Virus record (IMG/VR): IMGVR_UViG_3300032285_004054
Coordinates: 124,001-188,000 of that record
Length of the DNA: 64,000 nt
Reading direction: 5' to 3' (one strand)
This document shows positions 3,608-58,887 of the stretch, in pieces. The notes under the pieces are model-generated. The model made no database searches, had not been told where the DNA came from, and worked only from the letters and a program-made list of their open reading frames with translations. Every line of letters begins with the position of its first letter. Positions within the stretch are counted from its first letter, which is position 1. A program made the translations under genes and the position numbers.

Positions 3608-4156
3608 ATGGATCCTAAATTTAATATTTTATTTGAAAATCTTCTAGAGAGATATCAGCAAGGTGGTTACCTAATTGGCGATAGAGTTAGATTTCGTAAC
3701 GATGCTCTTCGTCATGAATTCTTTAAAGATAAGGCAGCTAGCTTTGTTGAGCTTGTAAAATCCTGTTCGAATGAAAATTTTGATTTAAATTTAAGAATTT
3801 CTTCGTTAAAGAGTGTATATCCAACAACTACACAAAATTATCGTGGAGGTACTGAATCACCTGATAAGATTTTTGCTGATATTATTGTTGAATACGCTCC
3901 TGGTCTCTATCGTACACCTATGACAGTACCTATTGAAGTACTTGAACTTATGGAAGACGGTATCAACCGCGGACCAGTACCTAATAGTTTAAAGAGAAAG
4001 AGTGATATTCACGGTCCTAAGGAAATAAAAACCAAAGAAACGAACGATCTTAAGGCTGAAGTTAATCTTAAGAATACAAACGTAAAGCTACCTGGTGGTA
4101 ATAAATGGGATGACAGTAAACCAGGTGGAGGTAATAAACCTAAGAAGAAACGCTAA
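3608..4156 (+). CDS. Conserved T4-like late hypothetical protein
   Basis: The ORF-track start (3518) overlaps gp25; the ATG at 3608 (MDPKFNILFENLLE) follows a CATAAATA late motif at 3583-3590. Confidence 0.65.
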   Translation: MDPKFNILFENLLERYQQGGYLIGDRVRFRNDALRHEFFKDKAASFVELVKSCSNENFDLNLRISSLKSVYPTTTQNYRGGTESPDKIFADIIVEYAPGLYRTPMTVPIEVLELMEDGINRGPVPNSLKRKSDIHGPKEIKTKETNDLKAEVNLKNTNVKLPGGNKWDDSKPGGGNKPKKKR

Positions 4157-48283: not shown

Positions 48284-48331
48284 CTCATTAATAATATGTG
48301 CTTTTAACCTTTTTACCACTAAATATTATAT

Positions 48332-48598
48332 ATGTCTTTGTTTGACAACATTGTTAATTCTATTTTAAAAGAAAGTGCTAATATATCTGGTGGTATTGGT
48401 AGTGCGTTTGGTCCGGGTGTAGGAGCGGAGGGAGCAACACAATTTTCAGCTGATACCTACGCAAGAGGAGATGCACGTATAGTTAAACCTTTAAGTAAAG
48501 GTGTAATCACTCGTAATGGAGTCGTAAAAACTGTATTTTCAACAGGTAAAAAAAGTAAAAAGAAACATTCCAGGCGCCGTAAACATAAAAGAAAGTAA
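48332..48598 (+). CDS. Small late protein, possible internal head protein
   Basis: MSLFDNIVNSILKES start, basic tail; TAAATA 6 nt before the ATG. Confidence 0.65.
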   Translation: MSLFDNIVNSILKESANISGGIGSAFGPGVGAEGATQFSADTYARGDARIVKPLSKGVITRNGVVKTVFSTGKKSKKKHSRRRKHKRK

Positions 48599-49014
48599 TG
48601 GAATACGGACATTGGATTGTAAGAGAAGGTGTTAGTATATCTGAGGGTACTTTTGGGTTTATATATGAAATTACCAATACTGTTTTAAATAAAAAGTATA
48701 TAGGTAAGAAGCAGTGTACAAGTCGTATTAAACGTAAACCTCTTAAGGGTAAAACACGTAATAGAATAGAACATAAGGAATCTGATTGGAAGTTATACAC
48801 AAGCTCCTCAAATGAACTAAATGAAGATATAGCAAAGTACGGAAAAGATAAGTTTTGTTTTGAAATTATAAAAGAATGTAATTCGAAGTGGGAATTAGCA
48901 TATTATGAAATTAAAGAGCAACTCGATAAACAGGTTCTTTTAAGGGAAGACTACTATAACGGTATAATAAATGTAAGAATAGGTAGACCTCCTAAAAGTG
49001 CTAAGATTAAATAA
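48598..49014 (+). CDS. GIY-YIG family endonuclease
   Basis: GFIYEITN...KYIGKK, WKLYTSS, FEIIKEC, YYE, YYNG. Confidence 0.8.
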   Translation: MEYGHWIVREGVSISEGTFGFIYEITNTVLNKKYIGKKQCTSRIKRKPLKGKTRNRIEHKESDWKLYTSSSNELNEDIAKYGKDKFCFEIIKECNSKWELAYYEIKEQLDKQVLLREDYYNGIINVRIGRPPKSAKIK

Positions 49015-50122: not shown

Positions 50123-50188
50123 GTGAATTAAAGACCCTTTAAGCCCCCTGAACAATTGTTTTTATGGAACTTTCAATAAATATATTAT

Positions 50189-50530
50189 ATGTCTAAATTC
50201 GCATCTGCTCTAAAATCTGTTTTTGAAGATATGGCTCTAGGAACACCTGCTCCTCAGGCCGGAAACTCTGCTGCAACCGCAAGTGCTCCTACTGCTACTG
50301 GTCCTGTTGCTACTTCTAATCCTCCTAATCAAACTTTAACTCCTAGTCCTTCTACTGGAGCACAGCCTAACCCTCTTAAAGCTGCAGCTGCTGTTACTGG
50401 TGCTAAGCCTAATTTACAAGCTAACGATCCTAACCTTTTAGCTTTTGCTAAATCTCAAAATTTAAATCCTCAAGATGTTTATAAAGCTTTAACATCTTCT
50501 GCTACTACCCATCAGCCTAACGTTCCTTAA
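50189..50530 (+). CDS. Ala/Pro/Thr-rich late protein
   Basis: AATAAATA at 50175-50182, 6 nt before the ATG; first gene of a tightly coupled operon. Confidence 0.7.
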   Translation: MSKFASALKSVFEDMALGTPAPQAGNSAATASAPTATGPVATSNPPNQTLTPSPSTGAQPNPLKAAAAVTGAKPNLQANDPNLLAFAKSQNLNPQDVYKALTSSATTHQPNVP

Positions 50531-50898
50531 TGCACGAGGCTGTAATCAATCTGCTTAAGCTTCAGAACCAATTACGTATTTGTCATTGGCAAACGGATTC
50601 TTTTTCTGAGCACAAAGCTCTTGATAAAGCTTATAACGGCTTAAATGGTGTTATTGATGATCTTGTAGAAGTTTATCAAGGTAAGCACGGAAAGCTAAAG
50701 TTTAACGATACTATTGATTTAACTTTAGTTAACTATGAAGAGATATCTCTTCAGGATATCCTTCAAGATGTTTACGAGTATCTTCAAACAACATTTGTTG
50801 ATGATATGGATCCAGAAATGGATACCGATCTTTTGAATATAAAAGACGAAGGTTTAGCTGTTATCAATCGTTTACGTTATCTTCTTACGCTTAAGTAA
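50530..50898 (+). CDS. Ferritin/Dps-like four-helix protein (DUF5856-like)
   Basis: LRICHWQT..FSEHKALDKAY...IDDLVEVYQGKHG...RLRYLLTLK. Confidence 0.78.
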   Translation: MHEAVINLLKLQNQLRICHWQTDSFSEHKALDKAYNGLNGVIDDLVEVYQGKHGKLKFNDTIDLTLVNYEEISLQDILQDVYEYLQTTFVDDMDPEMDTDLLNIKDEGLAVINRLRYLLTLK

Positions 50899-50908
50899 TA
50901 GATAACAT

Positions 50909-51871
50909 ATGCTTTCTGAATCTTTTTTAAGTTTTTATAAAAACGGTTCGTATATTACCGAGGGAGGTAATGTATTCGGTACTACTCATCCTATTAAGAA
51001 AGAATATATTGATTCTACTTTAAAAGAATTTTATAAACAACTTATCGGTATTTTTCCTGAGGCTGATATTCATTTTAAAAGTATTCGTACTTTAGGTTCT
51101 GTTGGCAAGAAGCCTGAATCTGGAGATATTGATCTTGCTTTATCAGAAGATTCATTTAAAAATATTGATGATTGGGGTCTGAATAGATCTGAAGTAAAAC
51201 ATCTTTTTGATTCTTTTAAAAAGAAATCTAGAACCGCAACTGATGAACTTCTTCTAAAGAGAGCAGTTATTGTAGCAATTGCTGAAAAAATAAACGAAAG
51301 CGAATGTGATATAGTTACTGATATTAAGGGTTCCTCTGCAGGATCTCTTTTTTGTCAATTTCCACAATTTGATGATCAAGGTAACAAACTAGAAACATTT
51401 GTTCAAATTGATATTAATGTAGGAAATCTAGATTGGTTATCCTTTGCTTATCATTCTGCTACATATTCTGGTAATGTTAAAGGTTTACATCGTACCCAGC
51501 TTCTTGTTTCCCTCTTTTCACATAAAGGTTATACATTTTCACACAATTACGGTGTAAAAGATAGAGAAACTCAAGAAATTGCAGCCTCTACTCCTCAAGA
51601 AGCCATCGAACTTTTAAATAAACTATACAATATTGAGTTAACTCCTGATATTGCTGGAGATTACTTCAAATTAATGAATTATCTAAAGTATGAACTCTCA
51701 CCTGAAGATCTTCATGCTGTATACGACACTTACTTACGAATTTTAGATAGTACAAGAGCTGATATACCTGAAGATTTACAGGAATATTGGAAAGAACATC
51801 AACAACGCTTAGGTCTTAAGGGTAAATTCTTACCTAATGAATCAAACCTAGCAAAATATAAAACAACATAA
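50909..51871 (+). CDS. Pol-beta superfamily nucleotidyltransferase-like protein
   Basis: LGSVGKKPESGDIDL (GS...DxD) plus third Asp in VQIDINV. Confidence 0.7.
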   Translation: MLSESFLSFYKNGSYITEGGNVFGTTHPIKKEYIDSTLKEFYKQLIGIFPEADIHFKSIRTLGSVGKKPESGDIDLALSEDSFKNIDDWGLNRSEVKHLFDSFKKKSRTATDELLLKRAVIVAIAEKINESECDIVTDIKGSSAGSLFCQFPQFDDQGNKLETFVQIDINVGNLDWLSFAYHSATYSGNVKGLHRTQLLVSLFSHKGYTFSHNYGVKDRETQEIAASTPQEAIELLNKLYNIELTPDIAGDYFKLMNYLKYELSPEDLHAVYDTYLRILDSTRADIPEDLQEYWKEHQQRLGLKGKFLPNESNLAKYKTT

Positions 51872-51872
51872 T

Positions 51873-53288
51873 ATGTCTGGAGTAGCAGGAGGTAATAGAA
51901 TCAAAAGACAAGACGTATCTGATACGTTCAATGACTATGTTAGAAGGGTTTTGACAAGAATTCCTTCTTTTGTTAATGCTTCCTTATCAGGTAGTGTAAA
52001 AGTAGGTGCAAAAGATGATTACGGTGATCTAGACCTTATTGTTTTGTTTAAAGGTAAGGATAAAAAAGTGGTAAAACAGCAAATTATTGATGTTGTTCAA
52101 TCTTTACCAGATGCCGTTATTGTACCTTTCAAAAATCCTCGCTATCAGGGTAGAAAATACTATAATGCTGGGGAATTAATATCCGTATTATTCCCTATTA
52201 CAGGCCGTCCCGGAGAATTTATACAGGTTGATAATAATGTAGCTTTATCAGTTGAAGAGCACACATTTAAAAACAATTTTTTAGATTTACCTGCTGAAAT
52301 TCAAGGACTTCTTATCGGTCTTACAAAAGTAGTAACACTCGAAGAAAAGCCTTCTGAGATTTTTAAAAAATTAGGTATTACAAATTTACCAAAATTAGCT
52401 AGTAATCAAGAATTTGAGTTTAATTTAAGCTCGGTCAATCTTTCTCTTAGAAAAGTTACTCTAGATGGATACAAAGAGTTATCCAGGGAAGTAGTTTGGA
52501 GTTCATCTGATTGGGAAAAAGTAAAATTACTTCTTAGTAAGTTCAATATCAATCTACCTTTTGAAGAGTTACTGAATAGTATTGCCAGACGCTTAACAAA
52601 TCCAAGATCCAAAGCAAGAATTGCAGGAATCTTTAAGAGTATGGTGAGTGTTAAGTCAGGGGAGGTAGGTACCGCTAAGGGAGCAGGTAAAGAAAAAGCA
52701 CTTCTTGCTGTAGCTCAAAAGCTTGCTGAATCTGTTGAAGAAAGTCAACAGGTTGTATCAATTTATGCCGGGGGGTTTAAACCACCTCATAAAGCACATT
52801 TTAGAAACGCACAAATTCTTGCAAACAAATCAAACAAATTAATAATTTTCATTGGACCGAAAATACGGGAAGGGTTAACAATAACACCTGAGCAATCTAA
52901 ATCTATTTGGGAGGTATACACCAAGTATATTGATGTACCTACCGAGGTAAGTATTAGTAGTATCACACCAATTAGAGATACATACGAATGGATTGACTTA
53001 AATCAGTCAACTGTCAAACAGATCATTACCGGTACAACAAAAGAAGAGATGGGTAAGTTCTCAAGTATAGCTAAAAACGCTGAAAAATACCCTAAAGTTA
53101 CCGTAGTTGAGTTACCGGTAATAACATACGGTGAAGATGAAAAATTCTCTGCAGGAGATATTAGAAAATCAGAAGATTATATCAAATCCGGTAGCTGGAT
53201 ACCTGCTGAGCTTAGTGAAGAGGATAAGAAAAAAGTTATTAATATAGCTCTACCGAAACAAGCGTTTAGAGAATATTTTAAGAAATAA
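51873..53288 (+). CDS. Fusion of Pol-beta-like nucleotidyltransferase and HIGH-family (cytidylyltransferase-like) domain
   Basis: N-terminal LSGSVKVGAKDDYGDLDL + IQVDN; C-terminal YAGGFKPPHKAH and FSAGDIRK. Confidence 0.75.
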   Translation: MSGVAGGNRIKRQDVSDTFNDYVRRVLTRIPSFVNASLSGSVKVGAKDDYGDLDLIVLFKGKDKKVVKQQIIDVVQSLPDAVIVPFKNPRYQGRKYYNAGELISVLFPITGRPGEFIQVDNNVALSVEEHTFKNNFLDLPAEIQGLLIGLTKVVTLEEKPSEIFKKLGITNLPKLASNQEFEFNLSSVNLSLRKVTLDGYKELSREVVWSSSDWEKVKLLLSKFNINLPFEELLNSIARRLTNPRSKARIAGIFKSMVSVKSGEVGTAKGAGKEKALLAVAQKLAESVEESQQVVSIYAGGFKPPHKAHFRNAQILANKSNKLIIFIGPKIREGLTITPEQSKSIWEVYTKYIDVPTEVSISSITPIRDTYEWIDLNQSTVKQIITGTTKEEMGKFSSIAKNAEKYPKVTVVELPVITYGEDEKFSAGDIRKSEDYIKSGSWIPAELSEEDKKKVINIALPKQAFREYFKK

Positions 53289-53294
53289 CTATAG

Positions 53295-53322
53295 TTGATA
53301 AAGAAATACGAGGTTATATAAT
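53295..53322 (+). promoter_or_regulatory. Sigma70-like promoter of the queD-queE operon
   Basis: TTGATA-16 nt-TATAAT-8 nt-ATG(53331). Confidence 0.68.
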
Positions 53323-53330
53323 AACCCGTA

Positions 53331-53612
53331 ATGAACACCGCAGAAACGTTTTCTTTTACAAAAGATGAACTAAATCTTATTACTGAATCTCTCTTATTTT
53401 CATCATCTGTTAATATCTGTGCAGATTGGGATGAAAATTCAATTACTAGTATGCTAGAGCTCGCTAAGAAGATTAAGAAGCATACAAAAACTGATACTGA
53501 TCTTAAAAATATTTACTTCTTAGAAGAAGAGAATTACGAAGAAAAGTGGACCGGTGATATTATTAAAAACTTTAAGGGAAAAATTAGAGTACTGGATTTA
53601 AGTAAAGCATAA
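53331..53612 (+). CDS. Hypothetical protein
   Basis: 93 aa, first gene of the queD operon. Confidence 0.7.
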   Translation: MNTAETFSFTKDELNLITESLLFSSSVNICADWDENSITSMLELAKKIKKHTKTDTDLKNIYFLEEENYEEKWTGDIIKNFKGKIRVLDLSKA

Positions 53613-53613
53613 T

Positions 53614-54132
53614 ATGTCTCAATACACATCTACTAAATTAATCGAGCTAGGCTCTTGTGCTTTTCGTCAATGGCGTGCTACCCACAGTCATTGCCAATAT
53701 ATTCACGGATATCGCTTAATGGCTAAGTTTTGGTTTGGTTGTGATTCTCTTGATGAGAAGAACTGGGCAGTTGACTTTGGAGGTCTTAAGGAGCTTAAGA
53801 AGATTCTTAACAATCAGTTTGACCACACCCTTTGTGTTGCTCAGGATGACCCTCTCCTAGAGGAGTTTAAGAAGCTAGATGATATTGGAGGTGTTCAACT
53901 CCGTATTATGGAATCAGTCGGTGTTGAAAAAACAGCCGAATGGTGCTTTAAAACAGCTAATGAGTTTGTAAAAAACCTAACACAGAATCGTTGCTGGGTA
54001 GAGAGTGTTGAAGTGTTCGAACACGAACAGAATTCTGCTATCTATTCTAAAGAAGATTTAACACTTAAAATAACACCTTCAGTAACTTCAACATCAAATA
54101 CATTTTATGCCTCAGACCGACCAGGAGTCTAA
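53614..54132 (+). CDS. queD: 6-carboxytetrahydropterin synthase
   Basis: HSHCQYIHGY, WAVDFGGLK, FDH, GVEK, VEVFE. Confidence 0.92.
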   Translation: MSQYTSTKLIELGSCAFRQWRATHSHCQYIHGYRLMAKFWFGCDSLDEKNWAVDFGGLKELKKILNNQFDHTLCVAQDDPLLEEFKKLDDIGGVQLRIMESVGVEKTAEWCFKTANEFVKNLTQNRCWVESVEVFEHEQNSAIYSKEDLTLKITPSVTSTSNTFYASDRPGV

Positions 54133-54322
54133 ACCTCTACTACTTAAACCTTACGCACCTGTAACAGGGGATGTATTTACAGAAGGTGAGTTCGGGTTTA
54201 CTAAACTCGTAGCTTTACTTAGTGTACTTGTATATGCACTCATTTATAATATTATTTGTACACCTTTAGGGTGGATTGGTATTGTAATATCTGCAATTGG
54301 GTATAAACTGATATCAAAATAA
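54107..54322 (+). CDS. Small membrane protein
   Basis: Two hydrophobic stretches; fills the queD-queE gap exactly. Confidence 0.55.
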   Translation: MPQTDQESKPLLLKPYAPVTGDVFTEGEFGFTKLVALLSVLVYALIYNIICTPLGWIGIVISAIGYKLISK

Positions 54323-54323
54323 T

Positions 54324-55154
54324 ATGGAAAATAATACATTAGAAATTTCAGAGCACTTCTACTCCGTACAATGTGAAGGTATCTCCACAGGTGTACCGGC
54401 GTATTTTATTCGTTTGAAAGGTTGTAATCTATCCTGTGGTTTTTCAGGTAAAGCTATTGTAGATCTTAAGCGTAATCTTGAAGAAGTTGAAGGTTATGTA
54501 GTAGGTGGTAATATAACTGGTGATTTACACAGTGAAGGTAAGGCAACATGGACATGTGATTCAGCACCTGTCTGGCTCAGAGGTGCTCATACTACATACG
54601 AGCAGCTAGTACAATCTTGGGTTGATCAAGGTATCCTAGATTGGATTCTAGATGGTACAATTCATCTTATCTGGACAGGAGGTGAACCTACAATACCTAA
54701 GCATCAAAAAGCAATTGTCGGTTTCTTGAAGTGGTTTGCTGACAAATATAAAACAGAAAAAGTTTATAGTGAGATTGAAACTAACGGTTCAATTGTTATT
54801 GAAGATAGTCTTCTTACTTGGCTAGATCAGATTAATTGCTCGGTTAAGCTTCATAATTCAGGCATGGATAAAGATAAGCGTATTAATGAACAGGCACTTC
54901 GCCGTATTAAGCTTCATCGCAATTATTCATTTAAGTTTGTAATCTCTGACGAGGAAGATTTAGTAGAAATTATTAGAGATTTTGTAGTACCTTTTGAAAT
55001 ACCTACTAACAGAATCTGTATGATGCCCGGACTAGATAGTCAAGAACATTACCATGAAAGGACACGTTTTGTTTTAGAGATGGCTAAGAAGTATGGTTTT
55101 AGAGGTTTATCACGTTTACATATTAGTGCTTGGGATCAAGCAACAGGTGTATGA
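54324..55154 (+). CDS. queE: 7-carboxy-7-deazaguanine synthase (radical SAM)
   Basis: EHFYSVQCEG..TGVPAYFIRLKGCNLSC...CDS, WTGGEP, IETNG, SVKL, FKFVI, RLHI. Confidence 0.92.
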   Translation: MENNTLEISEHFYSVQCEGISTGVPAYFIRLKGCNLSCGFSGKAIVDLKRNLEEVEGYVVGGNITGDLHSEGKATWTCDSAPVWLRGAHTTYEQLVQSWVDQGILDWILDGTIHLIWTGGEPTIPKHQKAIVGFLKWFADKYKTEKVYSEIETNGSIVIEDSLLTWLDQINCSVKLHNSGMDKDKRINEQALRRIKLHRNYSFKFVISDEEDLVEIIRDFVVPFEIPTNRICMMPGLDSQEHYHERTRFVLEMAKKYGFRGLSRLHISAWDQATGV

Positions 55155-56808: not shown

Positions 56809-57147
56809 ATGAGTAATTTATTTGATAAAATTATAAGCGAAATTTTGTTAGAAGGTAACGGTTATAATCGCGCCGCGCGAGGTGCCGGAGGCGGTAATCG
56901 CTCTAAGCAAAAAAGATACGGTGTAAAAAAATTCACACCGCCTGCTCCTGAGACTCCAACAGCACCTGTACAGGAAATTATCGATTATTCTAAAAATTTA
57001 TACACACTTAACTTTATTGAAAGCTTAAAAGATACTGATGGTAATGTAATTATTACTAAGTTTAAAGAAATATGTTCTGGTGTTCAAGCTAAACCTGAAA
57101 CACCAGGATTTGATTTTGGCATTTTCGGTAAAGGTTTAAACTTCTAA
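56809..57147 (+). CDS. Hypothetical late protein
   Basis: MSNLFDKIISEILLEG start; coupled operon. Confidence 0.7.
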   Translation: MSNLFDKIISEILLEGNGYNRAARGAGGGNRSKQKRYGVKKFTPPAPETPTAPVQEIIDYSKNLYTLNFIESLKDTDGNVIITKFKEICSGVQAKPETPGFDFGIFGKGLNF

Positions 57148-58392: not shown

Positions 58393-58420
58393 AGTATACT
58401 ATATTTTTATAACTTATCTA
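58393..58420 (-). promoter_or_regulatory. Sigma70-like promoter of primase
   Basis: TAGATA-16 nt-TATACT-6 nt-GTG(58386). Confidence 0.55.
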
Positions 58421-58887
58421 CGGGGAGCAGGCTGATTACCAGCTCCAGAAGCTAGATCACGAGAGCGCTTTGAGGAATTAATAAGATAACCATTTAAAAC
58501 CTCTATAAGACTACGAACTTGTTCTGCAATCTTGATAATATCTGTGGATGTGTCTCTAGAGATACCAGCAAAAAGGCTACCAGCAACATCAATATCATTT
58601 ACAAATTTCTGTAATGAATCACCTTTAGGGTTGTTTAAAGCATCAGCAAATTGTTCGAGCTTCTCAATCTGGGAGGAAAGATTACCAGCGTGCTCACCTG
58701 TACCGGTAGCAACAGGAGCAGGTTCTACACCATAGTTATCAGGAACAGGTTCATTTGTTGTTGAATCGTCTCCCTCTGAAGGTACCTGACCGTCGGTAGG
58801 AGGAGGTACATCTGTAGGAGCTGGAGCAGGAGGAGCAACTGTTTCATCTGCTTCAATTAATAGTGTATAAAGCTTCTTAAAGTCCAT
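58414..58887 (-). CDS. Hypothetical late protein, possible internal head protein
   Basis: MDFKKLYTLLIEA start, acidic/Pro-rich; CATAAATA at 58899-58906. Confidence 0.7.
   Translation of the reverse strand: MDFKKLYTLLIEADETVAPPAPAPTDVPPPTDGQVPSEGDDSTTNEPVPDNYGVEPAPVATGTGEHAGNLSSQIEKLEQFADALNNPKGDSLQKFVNDIDVAGSLFAGISRDTSTDIIKIAEQVRSLIEVLNGYLINSSKRSRDLASGAGNQPAPRR

What the first reader, a model, noticed from the sequence alone, without database searches (positions are those of the whole stretch)
50175..53288. Late operon with tandem Pol-beta-like nucleotidyltransferases, a HIGH-domain fusion and a ferritin-like protein: candidate virion-delivered enzyme system
Seen: one late-type promoter (AATAAATA) precedes four tightly packed genes: a low-complexity protein, a Dps/ferritin-like protein, NTase 1 (GS..DID..D) and NTase 2 (GS..DLD..D) fused to an HxxH cytidylyl/adenylyltransferase domain. 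NTase 1 starts with a T4-like cleavable leader (MLSESFLSF...ITE/GG), and the fusion has LAE/SVEE/S at the domain junction. Known: this NTase superfamily includes CD-NTases, MNT antitoxins, protein AMPylases and CCA enzymes; HIGH domains include NMNAT and PPAT. Inference: the enzymes are packaged, matured by the prohead protease and injected to counter defence (NAD+ restoration, tRNA end repair, toxin AMPylation, signal-nucleotide interference) or to take over the host. No function is established that I know of.
Basis: partly seen in the sequence, partly recalled or inferred. Interest (0 to 1): 0.72.

Follow-up and report, generated by a model that had tools for sequence, protein, structure and literature searches.

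The report
Capsid-targeted PolX-like nucleotidyltransferase pair in phage
A large T4-like phage encodes two small enzymes shaped like family-X DNA repair polymerases plus an NAD-synthase-like enzyme, tagged so that they are probably loaded into the virus head, trimmed by the head protease and delivered with the DNA; the family is widespread in aquatic phages and I found no description of it.

Summary
The "four-gene system" is not. Only the two nucleotidyltransferase genes travel together (adjacent in 78 of 80 related viral loci). The Dps-like gene and the low-complexity gene are local passengers.

Both "NTases" model as minimal family-X polymerases with palm plus thumb. Their closest solved structures are ASFV PolX and Pol beta/lambda, not CD-NTases, MNT, AMPylases or CCA enzymes. 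The fused HxxH domain is closest to NadM/NadR NMN adenylyltransferases, but the phage has no NadV partner.

The packaging idea gains real support. Of 92 representative relatives, 40 start M-GG. In the 52 with anything upstream, 46 have Glu at -1 and 40 have Leu/Ile at -3. This also holds at both internal junctions of fused polyproteins. It is the T4 prohead-protease rule, and the genome encodes that protease.

This lineage combines a propeptide with a late promoter. Leaderless relatives carry an early-class promoter instead. Both routes put the enzyme in the cell at the start of infection.

Function is inferred: action on DNA ends or gaps of the incoming genome. NAD+ restoration is not supported. 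No virion data exist.

The parts
50175..50182 (+). T4-type late-promoter motif AATAAATA, 6 nt upstream of the first ATG of the operon
   Evidence: Sequence. Genome-wide positional enrichment of NATAAATA before ORF starts, including tail sheath, tail tube, protease and scaffold genes.
50189..50530 (+). 113-aa low-complexity protein (pI 9.2). Not a conserved partner of the module.
   Evidence: Found only in the window's own locus among 80 related loci.
50530..50898 (+). 122-aa DUF5856 / Dps-like protein. A local neighbour, not part of the core module.
   Evidence: Pfam DUF5856 E 1e-13 and PHROG 858. H. pylori NapA E 3.5e-4, with the HW..H..DDLxE positions aligned. Detected in 8 of 80 loci and directly upstream of NT1 in the window's own locus and three close relatives.
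50909..50962 (+). NT1 propeptide (residues 1-18), candidate capsid-targeting sequence ending I-T-E before G19-G20
   Evidence: pLDDT below 50 for residues 1-17. Absent from homologues that start M-GG. The -1 Glu / -3 Leu-Ile rule holds in 46 and 40 of 52 extended representatives. T4 CTS properties from PMC9026906 and PMC5694885.
50963..51871 (+). Mature NT1: minimal PolX-like nucleotidyltransferase (palm + thumb + C-terminal helical extension). Catalytic G63-S64, D73, D75, D168 at nt 51095-51100, 51125-51133 and 51410-51412.
   Evidence: AF2 model pLDDT 92.9. ASFV PolX Z 9.0 with 165 of 176 residues aligned; Pol beta palm-thumb Z 8.9. Foldseek Pol beta/mu/lambda E about 1e-5. Invariant residues.
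51873..52727 (+). NT2 domain of the fusion (residues 1-285): second PolX-like palm + thumb, basic (pI 9.6). G40-S41, D52, D54, D120.
   Evidence: AF2 model. Pol beta 144-338 Z 12.0; ASFV PolX Z 10.7. Foldseek Pol lambda/beta E about 1e-7. Profile-profile match to NT1 across the catalytic motifs, E 0.0014. pI.
52722..52748 (+). Inter-domain linker with L-A-E (residues 284-286) and V-E-E; candidate protease site
   Evidence: pLDDT below 50 at residues 286-292. L-x-E kept in 119 of 120 close homologues. These are close relatives, so this is weak independent evidence.
52749..53288 (+). HIGH-superfamily adenylyltransferase domain (residues about 293-471). H306 and H309 in GGFKPPHKAH; F-S-A-G-D-I-R at 425-431.
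   Evidence: NadM NMNAT 2qjt Z 13.3; PPAT Z 11.5; M. jannaschii NMNAT Z 11.2; NadR Z 10.8. Weak sequence hits to NadM. The homologue P0226 passes Pfam CTP_transf_like.
53295..53322 (+). Sigma-70-like promoter match (TTGATA-16-TATAAT) in the gap after NT2-HIGH. It could give the downstream gene at 53331 and the QueD/QueE genes a promoter of their own.
   Evidence: Consensus match only; the number of such matches in the region is not above the shuffled expectation.

Best explanation
Core unit. The real unit is a conserved two-gene module. NT1 and the N-terminal half of NT2-HIGH are paralogous minimal family-X-polymerase-like nucleotidyltransferases. They have palm and thumb, like ASFV PolX, and lack the 8-kDa and fingers domains. 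The C-terminal half of NT2-HIGH is a HIGH-superfamily adenylyltransferase closest to NMN adenylyltransferases.

Delivery in this lineage. The module is transcribed from a T4-type late promoter. NT1 carries an 18-residue propeptide ending I-T-E before G-G. I infer that the propeptide targets NT1 to the prohead core and that the gp21-type prohead protease removes it. NT2-HIGH is probably co-loaded and cut at its L-A-E linker. The enzymes would then leave the head with the DNA.

Delivery in relatives. Relatives without the propeptide drive the same pair from an early-class promoter. In both cases the enzymes are present at the very start of infection.

Activity. The most likely activity is nucleotide addition to DNA 3' ends: gap filling or end repair/extension of the incoming or replicating genome. 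The HIGH domain would make an adenylylated dinucleotide such as NAD+. The phage encodes no ligase, so this could feed the host NAD+-dependent ligase.

Shown: folds, catalytic motifs, gene linkage, promoter motifs, the cleavage-site rule, presence of the protease. Inferred: packaging, ejection, substrate, and the role of the HIGH domain.
For: Folds. NT1 model pLDDT 92.9; best match ASFV PolX at Z 9.0 over nearly its whole length, then Pol beta, TdT, Pol lambda and TthPolX at Z 8.2-8.9. TUTases, OAS and CD-NTases match the palm only, at Z 4.3-7.2. NT2 residues 1-234 match Pol beta palm-thumb at Z 12. Residues 292-471 match NadM NMNAT at Z 13.3. Pfam DNA_pol_B_palm reaches its cut-off on the NT2-like domain of the fused relative P0249. 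Atlas and AFDB neighbours carry Pol-beta palm/thumb names.

Active enzymes. GS, DxD and the third Asp are invariant in 54 and 19 diverse sequences.

Linkage. NT1 and NT2-HIGH are adjacent in 78 of 80 loci. The three domains are fused in several orders: HIGH-NT1, HIGH-NT1-NT2, NT1-NT2, NT1-HIGH.

Processing. Of 92 representatives, 40 start M-GG. Of the 52 extended ones, 46 have Glu at -1 and 40 have Leu/Ile at -3 (binomial P 2e-47 and 7e-21). Fused proteins have INE before GGNVF and LNE/ITE/LME before SG(V/S)AGG at both junctions. Nine close NT2 homologues start MILLE or MILNE before SGVAGG. The leader is disordered in the model. A Peptidase_S77 (T4 gp21) gene is present here and in 4 of 4 near-complete relatives. 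In T4, 10-20-residue CTS propeptides are cleaved after Glu, with determinants at the -3 and -1 positions (PMC9026906, PMC5694885).

Timing. A late motif precedes the operon here and lies directly before NT1 in L008 and L009. In leaderless loci, 61 of 71 have TAT[ACT]TTTA[GA] before NT1, often with a GTTG(C/G) element about 19 nt upstream. This is the same bipartite promoter that precedes 17 genes in the cluster of small ORFs in phage immuto.

DNA context. The conserved neighbours are a DnaG-like primase, a PD-(D/E)XK exonuclease and NT5C. In the window the operon lies among helicase, polymerase, UvsX and Que genes. No NAD- or ATP-dependent ligase was detected.
Against: There are no virion proteomics, N-terminal sequencing or transcript data. 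No RNA run holds this sequence.

A position-specific score built from other putative leaders in this genome does not single out the NT1 leader (p 0.07-0.3), and it discriminates poorly even in leave-one-out tests.

NT2-HIGH has no propeptide in this phage, and the complex prediction gave no answer. About 40% of family representatives have no extension at all, so packaging is not intrinsic to the function.

The window's own proteins do not reach any Pfam, PHROG or NCBIfam cut-off. A profile of the family finds no PolX by sequence in the PDB. The PolX assignment therefore rests on predicted structure plus motifs.

Polymerase activity, the template requirement and the HIGH-domain substrate are all unknown. 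Some leaderless loci also carry a late-like TAAATA core next to the early element, so the early/late split is not clean. That the immuto small-ORF cluster is "early" is itself an inference.
Confidence: 0.45

Rival explanations
1. The enzymes are not packaged. They act in the cytoplasm late in infection, for example by filling gaps or trimming and extending ends of replicated concatemers before or during packaging. The (L/I)-x-E-GG element would be a structural or regulatory feature of the domain boundary, not a protease site.
For: The late promoter is compatible with a late cytoplasmic role. About 40% of representatives lack any extension. NT2-HIGH has no leader here. The leader is not statistically similar to other putative leaders in this genome.
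Against: A structural Glu would not be dispensable in the 40 M-GG forms, and the leader is disordered in the model. The same rule recurs before the unrelated N-terminus of NT2 (SGVAGG) in fused proteins. The motif matches the specificity of a protease that these genomes encode. Leaderless relatives use an early-class promoter, which argues against a purely late role.
Confidence: 0.2
2. This is the reader's reading: an injected counter-defence system that restores NAD+, interferes with signalling nucleotides, or repairs tRNA ends cut by host anticodon nucleases.
For: The HIGH domain is closest to NMN adenylyltransferases. One distant relative fuses the domains to a Nudix domain, as NadM does (P0362). 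Delivery at the start of infection would suit counter-defence. Many relatives carry extra HExxH (zincin-like) domains, as polyvalent injected effectors do (PMC5512222).
Against: No NadV/NAMPT and no Nudix is found in this genome. In surveyed phages every NadM co-occurs with NadV (PMC9503650). NADase defences yield nicotinamide plus ADP-ribose, not NMN. CD-NTase, OAS and TUTase structures match only the palm, at much lower Z than PolX. The conserved neighbours are replication and nucleotide-metabolism genes.
Confidence: 0.12
3. The PolX-like domains are non-templated transferases acting on a non-DNA acceptor: host protein nucleotidylylation, RNA 3' tailing or a small molecule. The HIGH domain would make the activated donor. 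The purpose would be host take-over.
For: The Pol-beta NTase fold is used for many acceptors, and palm-level similarity to TUTases and poly(A) polymerases exists (Z 5-7). NT1 has a family-specific C-terminal helical extension (residues about 253-320) with no match. Mature NT1 is acidic (pI 5.5), which is unusual for a DNA-binding enzyme.
Against: The structural match includes the PolX thumb, not just the palm. NT2 is basic (pI 9.6). The genomic context is DNA metabolism.
Confidence: 0.13
4. The module belongs to the 7-deazaguanine DNA-modification pathway. It could repair abasic or gapped intermediates of base exchange, or handle modified nucleotides.
For: NT2-HIGH is followed by QueD and QueE in the window and its close relatives. 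QueC is present in the genome. The cultured relative immuto replaces its G with fdPreQ1 (PMC10516641). 3 of 4 near-complete relatives have QueC.
Against: One complete relative with terminal repeats has the module but no QueC. Among cultured phages the module was found only in the immuto group, so the other phages reported with fully modified genomes (phiST, CP220; PMC10516641) gave no match. In most loci the Que genes are not neighbours.
Confidence: 0.07

Closest known systems
African swine fever virus Pol X (minimal family-X DNA polymerase, PDB 5hr9) and the palm-thumb of Pol beta / lambda / mu / TdT
   Same: Pol-beta NTase palm with GS, DxD and a third Asp, followed by a thumb-like subdomain. 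No 8-kDa or fingers domains, as in ASFV Pol X. Z 9.0-12 over 163-180 aligned residues.
   Different: No sequence-level match to PolX. NT1 has an insertion after the DxD strand and a 70-residue C-terminal helical extension. There are two paralogous copies, linked to a HIGH adenylyltransferase. The family has an N-terminal GGN motif of its own. Polymerase activity is untested.
NadM / NadR-type NMN adenylyltransferases (for example Francisella NadM-Nudix, PDB 2qjt)
   Same: HIGH Rossmann-like fold, G-x-F-x-P-x-H-x-x-H motif and an S-x-x-x-x-R motif. Best structural match Z 13.3. Public annotations of homologues call them NMNAT.
   Different: 17 bits against family cut-offs above 400. No NadV or Nudix in the genome. 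Fused to a PolX-like domain instead of Nudix or a kinase. PPAT, ATP sulfurylase and cytidylyltransferases score nearly as well (Z 9.7-11.5).
T4 internal proteins and Alt: capsid-targeting-sequence proteins cut by the gp21 prohead protease and ejected with the DNA
   Same: Short N-terminal propeptide ending (L/I)-x-E. Late promoter. A gp21-type protease, scaffold and major capsid gene cluster in the genome. The cargo is an enzyme, as with Alt.
   Different: The cargo is a polymerase-like NTase. In relatives the same sites separate the domains of a polyprotein. The leader is 18 residues long and not demonstrably similar in sequence to T4's. Packaging is unproven.
Polyvalent proteins of phages and conjugative elements (Iyer et al. 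2017, PMC5512222)
   Same: Relatives are multidomain proteins of up to 1,800 residues. They combine NTase, HIGH, Nudix and HExxH metallopeptidase-like domains, and delivery with the DNA is proposed.
   Different: Here the domains are split over two genes. Junctions carry head-protease sites. I did not establish whether this domain set is covered in that work.

Membership tests
Family X DNA polymerases (PolX) | Pol-beta-type palm with a GS motif and three catalytic carboxylates | tested here: met
   NT1 G63-S64, D73, D75, D168; NT2 G40-S41, D52, D54, D120. Invariant in the alignments.
Family X DNA polymerases (PolX) | Thumb (nascent-base-pair-binding) subdomain following the palm | tested here: met
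   Predicted models align to Pol beta residues 142-338 and to nearly all of ASFV PolX. This rests on predicted structures.
Family X DNA polymerases (PolX) | Match to the curated sequence models DNA_pol_B_palm / DNA_pol_B_thumb | tested here: not met
   No Pfam hit for either window protein at E up to 0.1. No PolX hit with the family profile against the PDB. Only the fused relative P0249 reaches the palm cut-off, 25.7 against 25 bits.
Family X DNA polymerases (PolX) | 8-kDa dRP-lyase and fingers (HhH) domains | tested here: not met
   Absent. The models start at the palm. ASFV PolX also lacks them.
Family X DNA polymerases (PolX) | DNA-dependent dNTP incorporation | not testable with these tools
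   Needs primer-extension and gap-filling assays.
NMN adenylyltransferase (NadM/NadR type) | HIGH-superfamily fold with (H/T)xxH and SxxxxR motifs | tested here: met
   Z 13.3 to 2qjt. H306, H309, S426 and R431 are invariant.
NMN adenylyltransferase (NadM/NadR type) | Score above the curated family cut-off | tested here: not met
   NCBIfam 17 bits against cut-offs of 409-418. Pfam CTP_transf_like is not reached by the window protein, only by the homologue P0226.
NMN adenylyltransferase (NadM/NadR type) | Works with a NadV nicotinamide phosphoribosyltransferase in phages | tested here: not met
   No NAPRTase-family match in the complete genome. The co-occurrence rule comes from PMC9503650.
T4-type capsid-targeted, protease-processed head proteins | Short N-terminal propeptide ending in (L/I)-x-E | tested here: met
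   Residues 1-18 end in I-T-E. Family-wide rule. Disordered in the model.
T4-type capsid-targeted, protease-processed head proteins | gp21-type prohead protease encoded by the phage | tested here: met
   Peptidase_S77 at 101 bits, genome 109623-110297. Also found in 4 of 4 near-complete relatives.
T4-type capsid-targeted, protease-processed head proteins | Late expression | tested here: inconclusive
   A late-promoter motif is present. No transcript data are available.
T4-type capsid-targeted, protease-processed head proteins | Sequence likeness of the leader to other leaders of the same phage | tested here: inconclusive
   Position-specific score p 0.07-0.3. The score also performs poorly on held-out seeds.
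T4-type capsid-targeted, protease-processed head proteins | Present in virions with a processed N-terminus | not testable with these tools
   Needs virion mass spectrometry.
   Only the palm aligns (94-115 residues) at Z 4.3-5.4, against Z 8.2-9.0 over 163-185 residues for the top PolX chains.
Dps / ferritin-like (the 122-aa neighbour) | Sequence match to Dps with the ferroxidase His/His/Asp/Glu positions | tested here: met
   NapA E 3.5e-4, with HW, H-K and DDLxE aligned. Pfam DUF5856. Fold and dodecamer not tested.

The most novel reading that the evidence does not exclude
A widespread and apparently undescribed family of aquatic T4-like phages carries a kit of three nucleotidyltransferases: two minimal PolX-like enzymes and an NMNAT-like adenylyltransferase. 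The kit is made either as separate genes or as a polyprotein. The capsid maturation protease cuts it exactly at each domain boundary, and it is ejected with the genome. This would be the first case of family-X-type polymerases packaged in a phage head, acting on the incoming DNA before any phage gene is expressed. Sister lineages would reach the same timing with an early promoter.
Probability: 0.35. Interest if true: 0.8.

Novelty: new variant of a known kind. Interest (0 to 1): 0.68.

Why it matters
Scale. The family is large: 581 clusters at 50% identity and 347 viral contigs from one scan. It has no Pfam, PHROG or NCBIfam model, and I found no paper on it. Public records label it "hypothetical" or "NMNAT".

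New biology. Recognising it as PolX-like gives phage biology a new class of DNA-end or gap-processing enzymes. It is also a clean natural experiment. The same enzymes are either pre-packaged (propeptide plus late promoter) or transcribed early (no propeptide plus early promoter). That pattern argues they are needed the moment the DNA enters the cell.

Predictive rule. The cleavage-site rule at domain junctions offers a sequence-only way to predict head-protease substrates and ejected proteins in uncultured T4-like phages.

Open question made testable. The phage has no ligase of its own, and an NAD-synthase-like domain is attached to a polymerase-like domain. This suggests a testable link between phage repair synthesis and the host NAD+-dependent ligase.

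Tractability. A cultured relative, Flavobacterium phage immuto, makes experiments feasible.

Tried and rejected
Leader scoring. I built a position-specific score from 12 other candidate leaders of this genome. It does not separate the NT1 leader from internal Glu sites (p 0.07-0.3) and does poorly on held-out seeds, so I do not use it as evidence either way. A loose regular expression for amphipathic leaders was too permissive.

Complex prediction. Mature NT1 with the NT2 N-domain gave no answer (score 0.00). This is not evidence for or against binding.

Sequence searches. PDB searches with NT1 alone and with a 54-sequence profile found no PolX. BLASTP of NT1 against NT2 found nothing significant; only the profile-profile comparison aligns the motifs.

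Missing partners. Searches for NadV, Nudix, NAD-dependent and ATP-dependent ligases and TGT in the genome found none. The extra HExxH domain seen in relatives is not encoded elsewhere in this genome.

Expression data. The search for RNA runs found only the source DNA sample, so no reads were laid.

Other. Rfam found nothing in the window. An apparent split in the DNA polymerase gene came from my ATG-only ORF caller; the frame is open for 848 codons.

Rejected idea. I considered a free N-terminal amine as a catalytic nucleophile. I dropped it because NT2 has four more residues before its GGN motif than NT1.

Full report
**Setting.** The window is bases 124001-188000 of a 218.4-kb viral contig judged complete. 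The phage is a T4-like myovirus:
- a gp21-type prohead protease (Peptidase_S77, 101 bits) sits next to a T4_CASP scaffold homologue and a 489-aa capsid gene;
- the window holds a baseplate wedge, tail sheath and tube, large terminase, DnaB-like helicase, UvsX, family-B polymerase, SbcC-like protein and ribonucleotide reductase.

**Observation.** Four + strand genes lie at 50189-50530, 50530-50898, 50909-51871 and 51873-53288, separated by -1, 10 and 1 nt. AATAAATA lies at 50175-50182, 6 nt before the first ATG. This is not a chance A+T-rich word:
- ATAAATA is the most enriched 7-mer upstream of ORFs (53 ORFs against 3.3 expected);
- 53 of the 83 genome-wide copies lie 2-26 nt before a start;
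- the genes behind it include tail sheath, tail tube, prohead protease and scaffold.

The catalytic motifs are real and conserved. NT1 has G63-S64, D73, D75 and D168, invariant in 54 sequences down to 30% identity. NT2 has G40-S41, D52, D54, D120, H306 and H309, invariant in 19 sequences. The 122-aa protein is Pfam DUF5856 and matches H. pylori NapA/Dps at E 3.5e-4, with the His/His/Asp/Glu positions aligned.

**What belongs together.** A scan of viral contigs gave 347 relatives, and I kept 80 loci.
- NT1 and NT2-HIGH are adjacent in 78 of them.
- DUF5856 was detected in 8 and lies directly upstream only in the window's own locus and three close relatives.
- The low-complexity gene appears only in the window's own locus.

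In most lineages the conserved block is DnaG-like primase, PD-(D/E)XK exonuclease, NT1, NT2-HIGH, NT5C deoxyribonucleotidase. The unit is therefore the gene pair, and its usual company is DNA metabolism.

The three domains are also fused in various orders in other phages: HIGH-NT1, HIGH-NT1-NT2, NT1-NT2 and NT1-HIGH, sometimes with Nudix or HExxH domains. This is strong evidence that they work together.

**What the proteins are.** Neither protein matches Pfam, PHROGs or NCBIfam at a meaningful level.

*NT1.* The AlphaFold2 model is confident (pLDDT 92.9, pTM 0.87) except for residues 1-17. The best solved match is ASFV Pol X (Z 9.0, 165 of its 176 residues aligned). Next come Pol beta palm-thumb, TdT, Pol lambda and Thermus PolX at Z 8.2-8.9. 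TUTases, poly(A) polymerases, OAS, cGAS-like and CD-NTases align over the palm only, at Z 4.3-7.2.

*NT2-HIGH.* The model (pLDDT 82.5) splits into two domains. Residues 1-234 match Pol beta palm-thumb (Z 12; ASFV PolX Z 10.7). Residues 292-471 match NadM NMN adenylyltransferase best (Z 13.3), then PPAT, archaeal NMNAT, ATP sulfurylase and NadR.

*Paralogy and related families.* A profile-profile comparison aligns NT1 and NT2 across GS, DxD and the third Asp (E 0.0014), so they are paralogues. Pfam DNA_pol_B_palm reaches its cut-off on the NT2-like domain of a fused relative. Atlas and AFDB neighbours carry Pol-beta palm/thumb labels.

*Limits.* By sequence alone the family does not find PolX. 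I therefore describe it as PolX-like, working from predicted structure plus motifs, and not as a proven member.

**The propeptide.** The 18-residue N-terminus of NT1 is optional. The nearest about 40 homologues have it. The rest, including cultured Flavobacterium phage immuto, begin M-G-G-N-V-F exactly where the window protein reads E-G-G-N-V-F.

Among 92 representatives of 50%-identity clusters:
- 40 start M-GG;
- of the 52 with anything upstream, 46 have Glu at -1 and 40 have Leu or Ile at -3, against background frequencies of 0.067 and 0.173;
- 34 of these are short leaders and 18 are internal junctions of fused proteins.

In the fused proteins the rule recurs at the second junction, before the unrelated N-terminus of NT2: LNE, ITE or LME before SG(V/S)AGG. 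Nine close NT2 homologues begin MILLE or MILNE before SGVAGG.

Published work on T4 states the following (PMC9026906, PMC5694885):
- internal-protein propeptides are 10-20 residues long;
- the first 10 residues of IPIII suffice for targeting;
- processing depends on positions 8 and 10 of that propeptide, the residues at -3 and -1 of the cut;
- T4-type proteases cut after Glu.

These genomes encode that protease. The leaderless forms (M-G, M-S) would lose Met and expose the same N-termini; Met removal before Gly or Ser is general knowledge, not tested here. Taken together, this is good indirect evidence that extended and fused forms are cut by the head protease, and hence that they are inside the prohead.

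A structural role for the Glu is unlikely, because it is dispensable in 40 clusters and lies in the disordered part of the model.

*Caveats.* Clusters are not phylogenetically independent. My attempt to show that the NT1 leader resembles other candidate leaders of this genome failed for lack of power.

**Timing.** In the leader-bearing lineage a late motif lies before the operon (window) or directly before NT1 (L008 and L009).

In leaderless loci, 61 of 71 carry TAT[ACT]TTTA[GA] just upstream of NT1, and at least 36 also have a GTTG(C/G) element about 19 nt further up. The neighbouring primase, exonuclease and NT5C genes almost never carry the downstream element.

In the complete immuto genome the same bipartite element precedes 17 genes in one 15-kb block of small, mostly unnamed ORFs. 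I read this block as the early region; that is an inference.

So the same enzymes are either made late and tagged for the head, or made early and untagged. Both put them in the cell at the start of infection. The split is not perfectly clean: some leaderless loci also have a late-like motif next to the early one.

**Function.** The NAD+-restoration idea is weak. There is no NadV and no Nudix. In surveyed phages NadM always accompanies NadV (PMC9503650). NADases do not yield NMN (general knowledge).

I favour action on DNA, either gap filling or 3'-end extension/repair of the incoming or replicating genome. The grounds are the PolX-like fold with thumb, the two active copies and the replication/repair neighbourhood.

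No DNA ligase of either type is detectable in the phage. It must therefore rely on the host enzyme, which is NAD+-dependent in bacteria (general knowledge). An NMNAT-like domain that re-makes NAD+ from the ligase by-product NMN would fit. This step is speculative.

A link to 7-deazaguanine modification is possible but not general. The Que genes are adjacent here, and immuto DNA is fully fdPreQ1-modified (PMC10516641). However, one complete relative lacks QueC.

**Prior knowledge.** Among 50,697 cultured phage genomes only the immuto phages carry NT1. There it is "hypothetical", and its partner is annotated NMNAT/NadR. Papers on immuto, on phage NAD systems and on phage polymerases that I could search do not mention this pair or a phage PolX. 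My literature access is partial.

**Verdict.** It is corrected in three respects:
- the unit is two genes, not four;
- the NTases are PolX-like;
- the likely target is DNA rather than defence signalling or NAD+ pools.

Packaging and activity remain to be shown experimentally.

Noticed in passing
window 3608-4156 (+), 48332-48598 (+), 56809-57147 (+), 58414-58887 (-); genome 1274-1546, 34684-35643, 40439-43796, 76435-77163, 85285-86253, 108462-109436: A dozen proteins, most behind the late motif, begin with M..F/L..(I/L)(I/L)xE leaders that look like capsid-targeting propeptides. They include the gp22-like scaffold, a MoxR-type AAA+ ATPase, a DUF2201 metallopeptidase-VWA protein, a DUF6321 protein and an 88-aa protein with a very basic tail. 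The phage may package an unusually rich set of enzymes. The statistics for the motif are weak.
   Followed up: partly
L001:6909-9632 and proteins P0134-P0240 (relatives of window 51873-53288): Most homologues of NT2-HIGH are 670-700 aa, and 907 aa in phage immuto. They carry one or two extra C-terminal HExxH (zincin-like) domains that are missing here and are not encoded elsewhere in this genome.
   Followed up: partly
L093 (phage immuto 60.9-76.2 kb) and upstream of NT1 in L010-L082: A sharply conserved bipartite promoter-like element, AGTTGC-N19-TATATTTAGGTAT, precedes 17 genes in a cluster of small ORFs in immuto. It also precedes the NT1/NT2-HIGH pair in leaderless relatives. It is probably the early promoter class of this phage group.
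   Followed up: partly
window 53295-53322: A near-consensus sigma-70-type promoter (TTGATA-16-TATAAT) lies in the 42-nt gap between NT2-HIGH and the next gene. It could give the following genes, including QueD and QueE, their own promoter.
   Followed up: no
window 53614-55154; genome 30265-30909: QueD, QueE and QueC are present, but no TGT/DpdA is found with the Pfam model. The relative immuto has fully fdPreQ1-substituted DNA made with a divergent DpdA3, so this phage's DNA is probably 7-deazaguanine-modified too.
   Followed up: partly
whole genome G000: No NAD-dependent or ATP-dependent DNA ligase was detectable with Pfam models in a 218-kb phage judged complete.
   Followed up: partly
window 48598-49014: A SegE-type GIY-YIG homing endonuclease lies close to the module, with homologues in 54 of 80 related loci. 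PHROG 447 and the immuto record label this family "NAD synthetase", which looks like a propagated misannotation.
   Followed up: no
upstream regions genome-wide: A second enriched upstream word, CATTTGGAGGTTT, contains a Shine-Dalgarno-like GGAGG. The Bacteroidetes-type immuto promoter is essentially absent (1 copy). The host may therefore differ from the Flavobacterium host of the nearest cultured relative.
   Followed up: no
window 48300-48331: The 88-aa leader-bearing basic protein gene is preceded by CTAAATA, one mismatch from the late motif, at the usual distance. TAAATAA and TAAATAT are also enriched upstream of ORFs, so the late consensus may be looser than NATAAATA.
   Followed up: no
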